Source: Aplysia californica
Taxonomy: Eukaryota
Direction of reading: 5' to 3'
NCBI RefSeq assembly: GCF_000002075.1
Contig: NW_004797614.1
Span: 66,030-118,179, forward strand
DNA: 52,150 nucleotides
The position numbers and the translations under genes were made by a program. The notes beneath the pieces were generated by a model. That model searched no databases. It saw only the letters and a program-made list of their open reading frames with translations, and had not been told where the DNA came from. Positions 4,743-43,726 of the stretch are shown piece after piece. The first letter of the stretch is position 1. Each line of letters opens with the position of its first letter.

Positions 4743-4820
4743 CGCCTTTTCCCTCTCAGTTTCCACGGGCTTGGGACCGTCTCAGGGTACACTGTACACC
4801 GAGGCCTGATTAAAAAGACG
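4743..4820 (-). ncRNA. Twister ribozyme (type P1), copy 1
   Basis: RNA: CGUCUUUU U^AA UCAG GC CUCGGUGUACAGUGUACCCUGAG ACGG UCCCAAGC CCGU GGAAA CUGA GAGGG AAAAGGCG. P1 is CGUCUUUU/AAAAGGCG, P2 UCAG/CUGA, P3 a hairpin, P4 ACGG/CCGU. Loop UCCCAAGC and the GAGGG segment match the rice twister core as I recall it and supply both pseudoknots. Predicted cut between 4812 (U) and 4811 (A). Confidence 0.9.
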
Positions 4821-5647
4821 GCGCTACCGAGCGCTCACGTCTGGGGTATGTTAGTTGTTAGTCAGTTTAAGAATGTTAGTGTTATGGGTTGGGTCAGTCA
4901 ACAAATTGGATGTTAGAAATTAGTATATTTTGCTAATTAAAGTAAGTTATAGCTACAGTTTGCATTCTAGTGATTTAACGATTGAGTAGTTGTTATTGAA
5001 ACAGCTGAAAAAAGACAAAACAAAGTAGCCGATTAAACCAAGCGCTGCCCCCACAGTGGCTGGAATAATTTCGGCTCGTTAGTAACACATTAATGAAAAC
5101 ACAGAAATGCACGTACAAGACAAGACATTTCAGTGTTAGATAAAATGGAAACTTTTTAGTTACTGTGAGACAACTATGTTAGTAAAGTAAAATAGAGAAA
5201 ATGCTGTGTCCACTTCGTAGGTAGCAGGTCCCCCCTCAGCGGTAGTGAGGGTAACAACTCACCAGCAACATGTGTAAAGTCCTCGTCAACTCCCCATTAC
5301 TCACATGATGACTTCAGCTGGTGATGTACAGGCCCTGAGCTTGCCTTGGTGTGTCCAAGACACCTGCTTCCTGCCTCATTGAGTTTTCTGTTGGTTACGA
5401 CAAACACGAGTGCAAAATATGTGTCGTTGGGTGGACAAATTTGTAAGTAAAGTAAAAGTTAAAGTAGTGTAGTACATTTCAAAAACCAAAATAGCAATTC
5501 AATTCAATTATTAGGTGAATTAGGTAAACGGAAATGGGTGAAATATAAGAAAACTAGAAACAACTTCAACACCATATTTTGTTAGAAAGTGCTAAAATGA
5601 AGAAAGAAAAGAGGAAAAAAAGTATGCAAATACAGCACTTGCACTCG

Positions 5648-7170
5648 TTACAGAGAGTCTATGATTACCCTGAACTGCTGAAAGCGCTCACGAAGGAATT
5701 CCAGGAGATGGCAGACTGAAAGTCGGAGTCGTGGGTTGTTCTGTACAAGCCTGTAGAGCACAAACCTGTGGAGTAAGCAAAAATACTAAGATAAATAATC
5801 GGCAACCTCAAGTGAAAGCAAGTATTCATATTATGGTAAATGGAAATTTCTGAATATTCTACGTAACAGACTACAAGTATGTATTTTCTTTAAAAAACCA
5901 ACATATTACTATTTTATTTTTCATTTACAAGGAATCAACAGCACTCATCTAAAAGTAAAGAAAGCTGCATTGGGTTAGGATCAAAAGTAAAGAATGTCTC
6001 GTTACCTGAAGAAGCCCAAGAGCGGCATTAGGGTTCTGTCGGATTTCACAGCGTGCAGAAGATCCTCTCCATCGCGAGGTTTTCGTTTGAAGACAAGAAA
6101 CCACAGCGTTGCTCCAAGTGCGTACGCGTCCGTCTGTAGAGAATAAGTGGAAAAAAGAGTTGGTCAATAGTGAGCAAATGGTTCCAAGCAACAGCATATT
6201 GCTGCAGTATACAAAGACCTTCAGGGAGCACACAGAAAAAAAGAAAGGGAAAATACAATTATCTACTAGTACGCAATAGTGACAAACAAGATTACACCAG
6301 ACAAACAAAGAAAGGATGTTATGCATATTATAACCCAATAACAAAAGCCACAGCGCATTTACAATTTTAAAATAAAATTACTTGTTTACAACAGAATAAA
6401 AACATACAATAAATTTACAGCAGAAACAAAGCCACAAAAACATACCGACAGACAAACAAACAAACCAAACATCAGGACAACTTTTACACAACATTAAACT
6501 TAAACAAATCAAACACGCAAATAAACAAGCTCACTAAGTAGAAAACTCTGCAGTTACTCACCAGAAAAGGATCTACGGTGATGTCAGTCTGGATCTCTGG
6601 AGCGAGATAGCCTTTTGTTCCGAGTACGTTCTTGCTGCTCACTCTGTTTTGTCCGTGTGCCAGAAGGCGGGACATTCCCAGGTCACCGAGAATAGCGTTG
6701 TTGGATTCATCCAGGAATACGTTGGCAGGCTTCACGTCCCCGTGTACAGCCCACCTGTTGTGAAGATATCTCAGTGCACAGGCGGTCTGCACGAAGCAGC
6801 GCTCTAACTGCTCCCTGTTGAGACGGTGACGCGCATCATGCAAAGATCCTCGTGAGCACAGAGGCATGCAGATAGCTACAAAGTCCTTGCACTTTACTGC
6901 CCAGTCCATCTTCATGATGTGCGGATGCGAAGCGTAGTCCATGAAACTGATTTCGTGAAAAATCTCCAGCCAACTGTCCCGGCCTTGGCAGTCTGTGAGA
7001 CGTATCTTCTTGATGGCCTTGCGAATGGAGTTGTCGTCTTCCATTGCCGCTTCCAGAACTTGAACCGGCGTGATCGTCTTCTGGCACAGAACGCGCACTT
7101 GCCTCATCTTCACGGATGACCAAAAGTCACCAGAAATGAACTTCACCAAAGGAACTGAAGAACTTTCCAT
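5648..7170 (-). CDS. Atypical non-RD Ser/Thr-type protein kinase, copy 1 (284 aa, 3 exons)
   Basis: Exons 7170-6562 (donor GTGAGT, phase 0), 6133-6006 (acceptor TCTCTACAG, donor GTAACG, phase 2) and 5765-5648 (acceptor CTCCACAG, stop TAA). Motifs: KAIKK, alphaC HEI, HGDVKPANV, DLGMSR, GTKGYLAPE, TDAYALG, NPRLRLS. Confidence 0.9.
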
Positions 7171-41193: not shown

Positions 41194-43648
41194 ACTTGAA
41201 AATTCACGACAGATGAGAAACGATACTCAGGCACACTGAAAAAGCAACGACCTCTCACTGTAAAAGCGTTACGGTGAACTGGAGGATGTCCAGGTCTGCT
41301 GACTTTATATTCCCTGTTGCTCCTCCCTTTCCCCTATCACCGCCAATCAAAATCCTAGTAAGGTTCATGTCAAATGAAGGATTAACAAAGTGTGGATAGT
41401 TGATTATGCGTAGTTGTTATTTACATGGCTAGAGTTTTTGTAACATCCATTGTGCTGATGCCCAAGACGAATAAAGACCTATTGTTTCCTTCTCCAAGGT
41501 GTGAAACAACATCACTGGAGGGTGAAACAACGCTGAAACGGCCTTTGTTGTCCAGTATTCACAACGTCTTCGTGTTGTTGGCTGCATGTCGCAATAGCGG
41601 CCAGCGTGTCATAAGGATTCCATTGAGCCAACTCTGCCCTGAGTATCAAAACAAATAAAAACACCCTGAAGCTACACGTGCTTACTAAAATCAACAACCT
41701 TTTGTCATCATTGAAATCCAAACAGTGAGGGTATGGGAGAGGGATGTTGGACAATACAGATAATTAAGAGCAAGATAGTGTTCCGATACTATAATCTTGA
41801 GCATTAAATTCCTCACAAGAAAAGAAAATACTCACTTTAAAACTACATTTCAAGTTCCATATCTAAAAGCAGAAATCTGTAGATTCTGTGTGGGTGCGTG
41901 TGTGTATGCGTATGCTTGAGTGTGTATGTGAGAGAATCGTGTGAGAGACGAGACTGAGAGTGGGTCTGCCTGTGAGTTTGTTTCTCTGTTTATTTTAGTG
42001 GTGAAAAAGTGAATTTCACAGAAAACGTAATGCTGGTAAAAATTTAAAAAAACAGCAACCTAACTAACCAACGAAAACGAAGGACGGGCTTTTCAGAGTA
42101 CAAATTGAGTGGAAAGTTTAACTAAGTAAACAGCACTTGGTGGGACTTGTTCTCCATATGATATAACAAAAACCAAACTTTTTAATCTTTACGCCGCTAA
42201 ATTTTGTTGCATTTTTTTCCGTTCGATGTTGGCTCACTGAGAGAAAGTCCCTGGAGCAAATGATCTTTTAAAAAATGGGATACATGCTTTGGGCTAAAAA
42301 AAAATTTTTTAAGGATTAACTCAGCCAGGTCAGTTTTTTATATTTTAAATAGTAGATGTTTCCGTGGCTAGCATTTTTCTGTGACTGATCGTGCTGTAGT
42401 CGAAAATGAATAAAGATCTATTGTTTCCATCTCCAAGATATGAAACAACATCGTCTCAGGGTAAAAAACCCACTGAAATGGCTTTTGTTGAAGTGTTTAT
42501 AACATCTGGTTGTTGGTGGCTGTATGACGCAGTAGCGGCCAGCACATCATTTGGACTCCATTGAGAGTACTCTGTTATAGCAGGTATTTAAAAAAGTACG
42601 CTAAAGATTCAAAAGTCTTTTGTTGACGTTGAAATCAAAACAGTGAGGTTTGGCTAGAGGGAAATCGGCAGAACAAATTAATGAGCAAGGTAATAGGCAG
42701 CTCCCAGAATTTTGAGTAAGAAATTACTTACAACTAATGAAAATTAATTACCTGGAAAACTACATTTCAGCTCCATGACAAAAAGTATAGAATTCTTGNN
42801 NNNNNNNNNNNNNNNNNNNNNNNNNNNNNNNNNNNNNNNNNNNNNNNNNNNNNNNNNNNNNNNNNNNNNNNNNNNNNNNNNNNNNNNNNNNNNNNNNNNN
42901 NNNNNNNNNNNNNNNNNNNNNNNNNNNNNNNNNNNNNNNNNNNNGGAGATGTCGTTTGAAAGTTGAAAAAAGTCTGGCTGTAAGTATGCATCTGTGTCAA
43001 TTTTCTGTGAGAGGCTGATAAGGAAATTTTACAGAAAACTGAACAACAGTTAGTAACAAAAACAGAATGAAAGGTGTTTTAGAGGACAACACGAGGGAAT
43101 AGCATAATTAAGTGACCAAGGGAACTGCACATCGCGTGACTTGTTCTCAAGGTTAAAGTAACCCAAACATCTTCACCCATTAATTCTTGACCTAAAAGTT
43201 TATAACCTTTGGATGCAAATGAAAGGATCCTTTTGAGTTAGGAGGAAGAAAATAATTCTGGGCCATATGGTTTGTGACATTCCTCAATCTCCAACAGTCT
43301 ACGTCTGCACGATACTGTGAACTCGATCCATTCCGTGGTTTTCCGATGTCTTATCTGTGGTTACATAGCGCTGCTGTTGAGAGCTTGGTTGTGTGGCACA
43401 ACACATGTTTGTCCTGTGAACCTTTCTGCATTTATGTATTTTGATTGGGCGACGGGCATTCTAACCTTCCTACCTATTGGAGTTGAAATAATCCTTACCG
43501 TGTGATTTGGAGTGGTATTTGCACAACGCTACACTTCGAGCAGGAAACAAAAACATGTCTTAGTAATGAGATGCTATACAGACTTCTGAATGGAGTTACA
43601 AAACATACCGATGAAATAAAACTACTTTGTTTTTTATGTTGGCATCAT

Positions 43649-43726
43649 CGCCTTTTCCCTCTCAGTTTCCACGGGCTTGGGACCGTCTCAGGGTACACTG
43701 TACACCGAGGCCTGATTAAAAAGACG
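43649..43726 (-). ncRNA. Twister ribozyme (type P1), copy 9
   Basis: Identical to copy 1. Confidence 0.9.

What the first reader, a model, noticed from the sequence alone, without database searches (positions are those of the whole stretch)
4743..43726. Kinase-gene tandem array in which every unit carries a twister self-cleaving ribozyme just downstream of the gene, on the sense strand
Seen: a 78-nt motif that folds into a complete type-P1 twister (P1 8 bp, P2 4 bp, P3 hairpin, P4 4 bp, UAA cleavage motif, UCCCAAGC loop, GAGGG pseudoknot strand). It occurs 9 times, ~836 nt 3' of each kinase stop codon and on the same strand. Known: twisters are fast self-cleaving RNAs, and in eukaryotes they are often linked to non-LTR retrotransposon 5' regions. 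Inference: any transcript running past a kinase gene is cut here. The ribozyme could form the 3' end, give a co-transcriptional cleavage entry for termination that shields the next promoter ~2.3 kb further on, or cut read-through RNA into unit-length pieces. I know of no description of an amplified host gene-twister cassette of this kind.
Basis: partly seen in the sequence, partly recalled or inferred. Interest (0 to 1): 0.92.

Follow-up and report, generated by a model that had tools for sequence, protein, structure and literature searches.

The report
Twister ribozyme trailing tandem kinase genes
Every copy of a small sea-hare (Aplysia) kinase gene is followed on the same strand by a well-preserved self-cutting "twister" RNA, and the pairing holds across the whole gene family and in marine-plankton DNA, making it a rare, testable case of a ribozyme tied to a host messenger RNA.

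Summary
Nine full-length type-P1 twister matches (Rfam RF03160, 58 bits, E 1.6e-10, below the 67.2-bit cut-off) lie on the minus strand. Each cleavage site is 836 nt past the stop codon of a three-exon, 284-aa kinase gene.

The nine units are 97-100% identical, so they count as one observation. The stronger evidence is genome-wide:
- At least 40 of 44 sites of this twister type lie downstream of a family kinase on the same strand. Those kinases differ down to 55% in protein.
- The roughly 120-nt RNA block stays 91-100% identical, while its flanks are 72-78% identical or unalignable.
- A second twister type behind more distant kinases differs by compensatory changes in nine pairs, including a pseudoknot pair.
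- Two marine-metagenome contigs carry the same kinase-then-twister order.
- Broken kinase copies mostly have mutated or missing twisters.

I read it as a selectively maintained cis-element of the kinase transcript's 3' region. It most likely cuts the message just before an A-rich poly(A)-signal-like stretch.

This scan had already found the same arrangement on another scaffold of this genome. I found no paper describing it.

The parts
4743..4820 (-). Twister ribozyme, unit 1 (78 nt with the 8-bp P1). Predicted cleavage between U4812 and A4811.
   Evidence: RF03160, 58 bits, E 1.6e-10, model 1-68/68 at 4816-4747. Helices and pseudoknot pairs are supported.
9592..9669 (-). Twister, unit 2
   Evidence: 9665-9596, 58 bits
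14420..14497 (-). Twister, unit 3
   Evidence: 14493-14424, 58 bits
19292..19369 (-). Twister, unit 4
   Evidence: 19365-19296, 58 bits
24142..24219 (-). Twister, unit 5
   Evidence: 24215-24146, 58 bits
29011..29088 (-). Twister, unit 6
   Evidence: 29084-29015, 58 bits
33850..33927 (-). Twister, unit 7. A C-to-U change in P2 turns one pair into a G-U wobble.
   Evidence: 33923-33854, 55.2 bits
38768..38845 (-). Twister, unit 8
   Evidence: 38841-38772, 58 bits
43649..43726 (-). Twister, unit 9. Its gene shows exons 2-3 only; the exon 1 region holds N runs.
   Evidence: 43722-43653, 58 bits
4816..4842 (-). Hairpin directly 5' of the cleavage site (10 bp with a 3-nt bulge). Its 3' strand overlaps the outer half of P1. 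The 5' cleavage product would end in this hairpin followed by a short run of U.
   Evidence: -11.7 kcal/mol, z -1.95, 9/200 shuffles as good. The sequence is near-invariant across paralogs and in the TARA contigs.
4850..4880 (-). Cluster of three ACUAAC motifs just upstream of the hairpin, with two more at 5083-5078 and 5183-5178. This is the STAR-protein / branch-point type consensus.
   Evidence: 69 in the window against 30.8 expected; five per unit on the sense strand between stop and twister. Also present in L021 and L170.
4723..4734 (-). A-rich, poly(A)-signal-like stretch (CAUAAA/AUAAAA type, not canonical), 10-20 nt after the ribozyme
   Evidence: Read. Canonical hexamers sit at the same relative place in L170 (+12 nt) and in the C127/C688/C2028 group (+42 to +70). 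Its role is inferred.
5648..7170 (-). Kinase gene, unit 1: exon 1 7170-6562, exon 2 6133-6006, exon 3 5765-5648 (stop 5650-5648), 284 aa. A TATA-like box lies at 7289-7284.
   Evidence: Pkinase, E 7e-27; 99% to P0001
10497..12018 (-). Kinase gene, unit 2
15325..16847 (-). Kinase gene, unit 3
20197..21720 (-). Kinase gene, unit 4
25047..26569 (-). Kinase gene, unit 5
29916..31438 (-). Kinase gene, unit 6. The exon 1 match carries one in-frame TGA.
   Evidence: (C344:96859-97428, 1 TGA)
34750..36272 (-). Kinase gene, unit 7
39673..41193 (-). Kinase gene, unit 8
44554..45039 (-). Kinase exons 2-3 of unit 9 (exon 1 not found)

Best explanation
The 78-nt motif is a genuine, probably active type-P1 twister. 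It is an old, selectively maintained cis-element of the 3' region of a lineage-specific family of small (about 280 aa) protein-kinase genes. The tandem array merely multiplied a unit that already carried it.

Proposed action: RNA polymerase II transcribes through the stop codon and about 0.8 kb of 3' UTR, which carries ACUAAC motifs and a conserved hairpin. The ribozyme then folds and cuts at U4812/A4811, just upstream of an A-rich poly(A)-signal-like stretch. The coding part of the message is thereby severed from its poly(A) signal or tail. It is left ending in a hairpin, a short U run and a 2',3'-cyclic phosphate.

I take the net effect to be post-transcriptional setting of kinase dosage: damping or gating. 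Proteins bound to the conserved upstream block may modulate it.

Shown: the motif, its fold-consistent variation, its strand and distance, its family-wide and cross-taxon linkage, and its excess conservation.

Inferred: that transcripts reach it, that it cleaves in vivo, where the poly(A) site lies, and the effect on expression.
For: 1. Real twister.
- Full-length covariance-model match. All upper-case consensus positions of RF03160 are matched except one (the U of the UAAA linker is G here) (alignment).
- On 21 variants from this genome and two metagenome contigs, 98.5% of pair cells are standard pairs, against 29-59% when partners are slid. Nine pairs change on both sides, including the T1 pseudoknot pair (C-G in 9 sequences, U-A in 11).

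2. Linkage.
- 99 core or covariance-model sites genome-wide: 41 have a family kinase exon 1 within 3 kb upstream on the same strand, and 13 more within 3-8 kb. tblastn on fetched loci adds four more. My own estimate of the chance expectation is below 0.1 site.
- At least 40 of the 44 type-A sites follow a kinase. These include contigs with a single family hit (C464, C343, C326) and a divergent pair, each gene with its own outward-facing twister (C804).

3. Constraint.
- The 121-nt block is 91-100% identical at 40 sites, and its 35-nt 3' half is identical at 40 sites. Yet the kinases differ down to 55%, and the flanks are 72-78% identical or unalignable.
- Across four arrays the invariant fraction is 0.8-1.0 from -36 to +78 of the cut, against 0.05-0.42 upstream.

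4. Other taxa.
- TARA contig L021 has the kinase at 473-1321 and the twister at 1818-1887 (63.7 bits).
- TARA contig L170 has the kinase ending at 659 and the twister at 775-844 (61.5 bits).
- Their proteins are at most 57% identical to the Aplysia paralogs compared, while the RNA block is 86-89% identical.

5. Co-decay. Loci with intact kinases have a perfect twister in 10 of 12 cases; loci with broken or partial kinases in 1 of 8 (Fisher p 0.0045; loci were classified by hand).

6. Placement.
- No AATAAA or ATTAAA occurs on the sense strand from exon 3 to 450 nt past the twister in the window.
- Canonical hexamers lie 12-70 nt after the ribozyme in L170 and in the C127, C688 and C2028 arrays, and at +79 in C436.

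7. Precedent. The Clec2 hammerhead cuts between stop codon and poly(A) signal and lowers expression (PMC6765202). P1 weakness is tolerated by twisters (PMC11662667).
Against: - So transcription through the motif, cleavage in vivo and the position of the poly(A) site are all unshown.
- The score is below Rfam's gathering cut-off (58 against 67.2 bits).
- The poly(A)-hexamer statistics are inconclusive. Upstream there are 9 observed against 14.7 expected (p 0.08). The downstream excess comes mostly from related loci, and many type-B loci have no canonical hexamer within 400 nt downstream.
- Most compensatory changes separate just two lineages (type A against type B), so there are few independent events.
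- A constitutive self-destruct element kept under strong selection is not obviously advantageous unless it is regulated.
- The co-decay table rests on hand classification of hits, because the sequences could no longer be fetched.
Confidence: 0.45

Rival explanations
1. Ribozyme-made mRNA end. The twister replaces cleavage and polyadenylation for this gene family. The mature, stable message ends at the cut, protected by the conserved hairpin, a U run and a cyclic phosphate, loosely like the stem-loop end of histone mRNAs or the U-rich cyclic-phosphate end of U6.
For: - A hairpin lies immediately 5' of the cut in type A (z about -1.9), and there are two hairpins in the TARA contigs (z -1.9 and -3.5).
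- A differently sequenced stem (GACUU/AAGUC, with varying loops) lies at the same place in most type-B loci. The type-C twisters, for which no kinase was found upstream, have none.
- The hairpin block is near-identical between Aplysia and the TARA contigs.
- There is no canonical poly(A) hexamer within -600 to +400 nt in the window or in the C627, C33, C351, C60, C102 and C122 loci.
Against: - Type-B hairpins are not more stable than shuffles (z +0.25 to -0.33), and two kinase-linked loci (C627, C2384) have none.
- Canonical signals sit just after the ribozyme in L170 and in the C127 group, which fits a normal poly(A) site.
- RefSeq built a gene model here, but what data it rests on is unknown to me.
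- I found no precedent for a ribozyme-defined end of a nuclear mRNA in the papers I could search.
Confidence: 0.25
2. Terminator or insulator. The true poly(A) site lies upstream. The twister cuts the read-through RNA so that polymerase is released before it reaches whatever lies downstream, such as the next promoter in an array.
For: - Many family members are in tandem arrays with 4-7 kb spacing.
- The next TATA-like box lies about 2.3 kb beyond the twister in this array.
Against: - The twister is kept behind kinases that are the only family hit on their contig (C464, C343, C326) and behind both genes of a divergent pair (C804). What lies downstream of those copies was not examined.
- No canonical poly(A) hexamer lies between stop and twister in the window, L021, L170 or C627.
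- From general knowledge, ribozyme cuts leave a 5'-OH, which the 5'-3' exonuclease used in torpedo termination does not attack without prior phosphorylation.
Confidence: 0.12
3. Selfish or hitch-hiking element. The twister block is a small mobile or retroelement-derived piece (retrozyme or LINE 5' end) that happens to sit by these genes and does nothing for the host.
For: - Known eukaryotic twisters are retrotransposon-linked (PMC8501958, PMC7761336).
- The same genome has other twister types with no kinase nearby, inside a dispersed repeat (L034, L037, L040).
- The block is sharply bounded at about 120 nt.
Against: - Strand and position relative to the kinases are constant at more than 50 sites, across paralogs of 27-100% identity and in other taxa.
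- Homology between paralog groups stops at the ribozyme's 3' end, so no element body follows it.
- Only short ORFs (at most 141 aa apart from the kinase exon) lie in the unit; they were not searched against protein families.
- The twister is mutated or lost where the kinase is broken.
Confidence: 0.08
4. Not a working ribozyme. The sequence is conserved for another reason, such as a protein-binding RNA or DNA element, and does not cleave.
For: - The score is below the Rfam cut-off.
- The minimum-energy fold is no better than shuffles (z 0.23).
- The upstream hairpin competes with the outer half of P1.
Against: - All catalytic-core positions are kept.
- Compensatory changes preserve P1, P2, P3 and the T1 pseudoknot between types A and B.
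- P1 is dispensable, and twisters tolerate many imperfections in direct assays (PMC11662667).
Confidence: 0.05

Closest known systems
Discontinuous hammerhead ribozymes in the 3' UTRs of rodent Clec2 and Clec2-like genes (as reviewed in PMC6765202)
   Same: A self-cleaving ribozyme lies on the sense strand of a host protein-coding gene, between the stop codon and the poly(A) signal. Cleavage removes the poly(A) signal and lowers expression.
   Different: - The ribozyme class is hammerhead, not twister.
- It is split by several hundred nucleotides.
- It occurs in mammals.
- Here the ribozyme is compact, is conserved with a flanking hairpin and ACUAAC block, and is linked to more than 50 gene copies. 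Its effect on expression is untested.
Twister variants at the 5' ends of non-LTR retrotransposons (Schistosoma mansoni, PMC8501958; RTE elements, PMC7761336)
   Same: The same ribozyme class in an animal genome, present in many copies.
   Different: Those sit at the 5' end of an element that encodes reverse transcriptase, and they process its own RNA. Here the ribozyme sits 3' of an intron-containing host gene, no element body follows it, and only short ORFs lie in the unit.
Rfam twister-P1 (RF03160) and the predicted gastropod twisters mentioned in PMC11662667
   Same: The same fold, core nucleotides and P1-open topology. That twisters exist in gastropods was already predicted.
   Different: Those reports list motifs and, in the text I could read, do not mention kinases or genomic context. 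The copies here score 42-65 bits, below the 67.2-bit gathering score.
Engineered twisters in 3' UTRs used as expression switches (PMC5052635, PMC10761166)
   Same: A twister placed in a 3' UTR; the abstracts describe ribozymes there being used to control reporter gene expression.
   Different: Those are artificial constructs. This would be a natural counterpart.
Intronic CPEB3 HDV-like ribozyme and the bacterial glmS ribozyme
   Same: Ribozymes conserved in cis with a particular host gene.
   Different: They lie in an intron or a 5' UTR, belong to other ribozyme classes, and glmS is metabolite-controlled.

Membership tests
Twister ribozyme, type P1 (Rfam RF03160) | Score at or above Rfam's curated gathering score (an operational cut-off, not a structural feature) | tested here: not met
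   58 bits (one copy 55.2) against 67.2. The match is full-length (1-68/68) with E 1.6e-10. The best copies elsewhere in the genome reach 65.4 bits.
Twister ribozyme, type P1 (Rfam RF03160) | Conserved core nucleotides: UAA at the cleavage site, GCC after P2, the GGUCCCAAGCCCG P4 stem-loop, and GAGGG | tested here: met
   All present in all nine copies. Type B shows a paired change, UCUC with GAGAG.
Twister ribozyme, type P1 (Rfam RF03160) | Helices P1, P2, (P3) and P4 in the P1-open order, supported by variation | tested here: met
   98.5% of cells are paired. Both-side changes occur in 4 pairs of P1, 3 of P2 and 1 of P3; P4 is invariant. Slid controls give 29-59% paired.
Twister ribozyme, type P1 (Rfam RF03160) | Two pseudoknots (T1 and T2) joining L4 to L1 and L2 | tested here: met
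   T1: 3 pairs, the middle one C-G in 9 sequences and U-A in 11. T2: 2 invariant standard pairs, which is consistent but uninformative.
Twister ribozyme, type P1 (Rfam RF03160) | Site-specific self-cleavage giving a 2',3'-cyclic phosphate and a 5'-OH | not testable with these tools
   Needs an in-vitro transcription assay or end mapping.
3'-UTR ribozyme of a host gene (Clec2-type arrangement) | Ribozyme on the sense strand between the stop codon and the poly(A) signal of a protein-coding gene | tested here: inconclusive
   Sense strand and position after the stop are shown. The poly(A) site is unknown. Canonical hexamers follow the ribozyme in some family members but not in the window.
3'-UTR ribozyme of a host gene (Clec2-type arrangement) | Cleavage lowers expression of the host gene | not testable with these tools
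   Needs a reporter or knock-in experiment.
Retrotransposon-borne twister (5'-end processing) | Ribozyme at the 5' terminus of an element whose conserved body, with a reverse-transcriptase ORF, follows downstream | tested here: not met
   Homology between paralog groups ends at the ribozyme's 3' end. Only short ORFs lie in the unit; no family search was run on them.
Eukaryotic protein kinase (Pfam PF00069) | Kinase-domain match with the catalytic-loop Asp, the VAIK-type Lys, and DFG/APE motifs | tested here: met
   Pkinase E 7e-27. HGD, AIKK, D(L/F)G and APE are present, but there is no glycine-rich loop. Nearest solved kinases are Snf1, SIK and MARK at E 1e-19. Activity is untested.

The most novel reading that the evidence does not exclude
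A whole gene family makes its mRNA 3' ends with a ribozyme instead of the cleavage and polyadenylation machinery. The twister cut leaves a conserved hairpin, a U run and a cyclic-phosphate terminus that stabilises a poly(A)-less message, possibly through La/LSm-type or STAR-type proteins bound to the conserved ACUAAC/hairpin block. That would be a third way, besides poly(A) tails and the histone stem-loop, to finish an animal mRNA.
Probability: 0.2. Interest if true: 0.92.

Novelty: new variant of a known kind. Interest (0 to 1): 0.74.

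Why it matters
Twisters are abundant, yet the 2021 S. mansoni paper states they had "no confirmed biological function" before its retrotransposon case (PMC8501958). The only natural ribozyme known between the stop codon and the poly(A) signal of animal genes is the split Clec2 hammerhead (PMC6765202).

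Here a compact twister is tied, under clear selective constraint, to more than 50 copies of one host gene family in Aplysia. That makes the question "what does a twister do for a cell?" directly testable with end mapping and reporter assays. It would also give a natural example of the 3'-UTR ribozyme switches that synthetic biologists build.

If the cut end proves to be the mature mRNA end, it would be a new mode of mRNA 3'-end formation.

Tried and rejected
- **More paralog sequence.** I therefore could not read the C934, C804, C343, C326, C287, C92 and C2451 copies. I used hit tables and pattern matches instead.
- **Metagenome scan.** A scan with the 18-nt P4/L4 core returned 120 loci, all without kinases and without the type-A 5' half, so I take them for unrelated twisters. 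It was uninformative.
- **Own-genome gene models.** The look-up of encoding contigs for P0001 and P0002 returned nothing; own-genome records are left out.
- **Distant kinase contigs.** Logan contigs L168 and L169 with distant kinases hold no twister.
- **Poly(A) hexamer counts.** Counts around 17 loci were not significant upstream (9 against 14.7 expected, p 0.08), and the downstream excess comes from related loci.
- **Atlas search.** It only confirmed "protein kinase".
- **Considered and dropped:**
  - A 3' splice site reading of ACUAAC + CCCCAG just before the hairpin. The AG is absent in the TARA contigs.
  - A C/D-box reading of the UGAUGA after P1. It is not conserved across loci.
  - A Pfam search of a 1067-aa ORF upstream of a type-C twister gave only a sub-threshold TPR-like hit.

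Full report
**Origin and gaps**

The window is G000:C344:66030-118179 of a 927-Mb, 4332-contig assembly. The kinase it encodes is 99% identical to a protein that NCBI names from Aplysia californica.

I tested the N runs first. Every run inside the array replaces the stretch that, in the one gapless unit, is 8812-8933: a (GT)n run plus 30-nt repeats. The flanks align collinearly to that unit, and gap sizes of 136-168 fit. The gaps lie between one unit's twister and the next unit's promoter, never between an ATG and its twister. Nothing was filled. The window holds further N runs that the program's note did not list (3237-3389, 42799-42944, 45084-45221 and four more).

**The observation**

At Rfam's gathering threshold nothing is reported. 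With the E-value threshold, nine full-length matches to twister-P1 (RF03160) appear on the minus strand. Eight score 58 bits (E 1.6e-10) and one scores 55.2 bits, against a cut-off of 67.2. The 16-nt P4/L4 core occurs nine times against 0.04 expected.

The gene is a three-exon kinase: exon 1 7170-6562, exon 2 6133-6006, exon 3 5765-5648. It has a Pkinase domain (E 7e-27) and encodes 284 aa. Eight units have all three exons. The ninth shows exons 2-3 only. The cut site is 836 nt past the stop codon in eight units and 5 nt closer in one.

The units are 97-100% identical, so the nine copies are one observation multiplied by recent tandem duplication.

**Is it a real twister?**

I collected variants from elsewhere in the genome and from two metagenome contigs, and aligned 21 of them. 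Two main types emerge.
- Type A (this window, C127, C436, C688, C2028 and the two TARA contigs) has the consensus loop and GAGGG.
- Type B (C627, C2384, C428, C2423, C33, C244, C351, C60, C102, C122) has UCUC in the loop together with GAGAG.

Counting a structure I wrote from the Rfam consensus plus the two pseudoknots gave these results:
- 98.5% of pair cells are standard pairs, against 29-59% when the 3' partners are slid by 1-3 columns.
- Nine pairs change on both sides: four in P1, three in P2, one in P3 and the middle pair of pseudoknot T1 (C-G in 9 sequences, U-A in 11).

Most of these changes separate the two types, so independent events are few. Even so, both lineages clearly keep the fold.

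The weak, A-U-rich P1 and the sub-threshold score do not argue against activity. Direct assays of natural twisters found P1 dispensable and imperfections widely tolerated (PMC11662667). Cleavage itself is untested.

**The linkage is family-wide, not a feature of this array**

A six-frame search with exon 1 found 150 kinase hits of 26-100% identity. Covariance-model and core-pattern searches found 99 distinct sites. About seven of those are bare 13-mer matches without a full twister.

Of the 99 sites, 41 have a family kinase exon 1 within 3 kb upstream on the same strand, and 13 more within 3-8 kb. tblastn on fetched flanks adds four more. With 150 hits in 927 Mb, my estimate of the chance expectation for all sites together is below 0.1.

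For type A alone, the 35-nt 3' half of the ribozyme occurs 44 times with no control hits. At least 40 of these follow a kinase. They include contigs with a single family hit (C464, C343, C326) and a divergent pair in which each gene has its own outward-facing twister (C804).

On C344 the array extends beyond the window on both sides, with at least 19 copies. Some twisters are not kinase-linked. A short 52-nt type (L034, L037, L040, L044, L028) has no kinase within 8.5 kb, and three of its copies sit inside a dispersed repeat.

**Constraint**

- The 121-nt block 4862->4742 holds the ACUAAC motifs, the hairpin, the U run and the twister. It is 91-100% identical at 40 sites, although the kinases in front of it differ down to 55% in protein.
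- With a 1.3-kb query, the flanks in the 75-80%-identity paralogs are 72-78% identical, while the block is 92-97%.
- Against the 55% paralogs, nothing but the block aligns.
- In a four-array alignment, the invariant fraction is 0.8-1.0 from -36 to +78 of the cut, against 0.05-0.42 upstream.

**Other organisms**

Two TARA Oceans metagenome contigs carry family kinases followed by the same ribozyme on the same strand.
- L021: gene 473-1321, twister 1818-1887, 63.7 bits.
- L170: gene ending at 659, twister 775-844, 61.5 bits.

Their proteins are at most 57% identical to the Aplysia paralogs I compared. Their hairpin-plus-twister block is 86-89% identical to Aplysia's. Both also have ACUAAC-type motifs just upstream. 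The L021 gene is uninterrupted, unlike the three-exon Aplysia genes.

**Co-decay**

Kinase copies with stop codons or only partial matches (C92, C287, C2451, C436:218395, C60, C461, C21, C599) have a mutated, half-preserved or undetectable twister. In C92, for example, an invariant loop U is changed.

By locus, 10 of 12 intact loci have a perfect twister, against 1 of 8 defective ones (Fisher p 0.0045). I classified these by hand from hit tables, because the sequences could no longer be fetched, so this needs repeating blind.

**Anatomy around the cut**

Immediately 5' of the cut, type A folds into a 10-bp bulged hairpin (-11.7 kcal/mol, z about -1.9). The TARA versions have two hairpins (z -1.9 and -3.5). 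Most type-B loci have a different stem at the same place, though it is not more stable than shuffles. Two kinase-linked loci and the non-kinase type C have none.

In the minimum-energy fold of the whole region, the hairpin takes the outer half of P1, while P2, P3 and P4 form as in the twister. The 5' product would therefore end in a hairpin, a short U run and a cyclic phosphate.

Five ACUAAC motifs lie between the stop codon and the twister in each unit. The window holds 69 against 30.8 expected.

In the window, no AATAAA or ATTAAA occurs on the sense strand from exon 3 to 450 nt past the ribozyme; an A-rich CAUAAA-type stretch follows it by about 10 nt. Canonical hexamers follow the ribozyme by 12-70 nt in L170 and in the C127, C688 and C2028 arrays, and by 79 nt in C436. 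Many type-B loci have none within 400 nt. Pooled counts are not significant.

**Mechanism**

I commit to a cis-acting cut in the kinase transcript's 3' region, just before the poly(A)-signal-like stretch. It severs the message body from its poly(A) signal or tail and so sets kinase dosage (confidence 0.45). The rivals are:
- the cut end being the mature, hairpin-protected, poly(A)-less mRNA end (0.25);
- termination or insulation (0.12), weakened by the single copies, the divergent pair and the 5'-OH chemistry, which I cite from general knowledge;
- a selfish element (0.08);
- a non-cleaving conserved element (0.05).

Shown: motif, fold-consistent variation, strand, distance, linkage, constraint and cross-taxon conservation. 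Inferred: transcription through the site, cleavage in vivo, the poly(A) site and the effect on expression. The RNA-read route was closed.

**Comparison with what is known**

- Twisters in gastropods had been predicted (PMC11662667).
- The known eukaryotic role is 5' processing of non-LTR retrotransposons (PMC8501958, PMC7761336). The defining layout of that role is not met here.
- The closest functional analogue is the split hammerhead in Clec2 3' UTRs (PMC6765202).
- No paper in the searchable library combines "twister ribozyme" with Aplysia, and I found none describing a twister linked to a host gene family.
- This scan had already reported the same arrangement on another scaffold of this genome (s1-680729). 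My tests here are independent of that note and agree with it.

Noticed in passing
window 7391-7616 vs 8356-8580, and 7846-7937 vs 8759-8844: Each unit holds two diverged copies (73-75% identity) of the block just upstream of the kinase promoter. The intergenic part is therefore itself an internal duplication: a second, gene-less promoter-like block.
   Followed up: partly
L022 62-176, L023 126-240, L024 19-133: A U5 spliceosomal RNA gene (96-98 bits) lies about 500 nt upstream of the kinase homolog P0010 on three marine-metagenome contigs.
   Followed up: no
L034 9428-9479, L037 976-1027 (-), L040 976-1027 (-), L044, L028: A short 52-nt twister type without P3. No kinase lies within 8.5 kb and no upstream hairpin is present. 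Three copies lie inside a dispersed repeat, with homology on both sides (84-95%). L037 has a 1067-aa ORF 1.6 kb upstream on the same strand, with only a sub-threshold TPR-like Pfam hit.
   Followed up: partly
G000:C326:805142-805352: In this paralog the roughly 45-nt ACUAAC-bearing segment just upstream of the hairpin is tandemly multiplied about five to six times (repeated hits of query 761-809).
   Followed up: no
L004/L009/L011/L013, +199 to +511 nt past the cleavage site: The stretch downstream of the twister is more conserved among four paralogous arrays (0.48-0.78 invariant) than the 3' UTR upstream of it (0.05-0.42). What it is remains unknown.
   Followed up: no
window 30830-31399 (unit 6): This unit's exon 1 match covers only residues 15-203 and carries one in-frame TGA, yet the twister behind it is perfect. 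It may be a young pseudogene, or it may use a later start codon.
   Followed up: no
window 3237-3389, 42799-42944, 45084-45221, 45439-45538, 46783-47083, 47789-48045, 48050-48237: N runs that are not in the list added by the scan's program. The one at 42799-42944 lies inside the finding's range, at the same microsatellite position as the listed gaps.
   Followed up: yes
window 49875-49970: A degenerate TAGGGG/TTAGGG-like hexamer array (about 15 copies, 69-79% matches) outside the kinase array.
   Followed up: no
L047 (G000:C440, about 147676-147745, +): A further twister variant, with an extra stem inserted between P4 and the 3' strand of P2 and no kinase detected within 9 kb upstream.
   Followed up: no
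L021 473-1321: The TARA kinase homolog P0009 is encoded without introns, whereas the Aplysia genes have two introns. P0010's gene call stops at the position of the first Aplysia intron.
   Followed up: no
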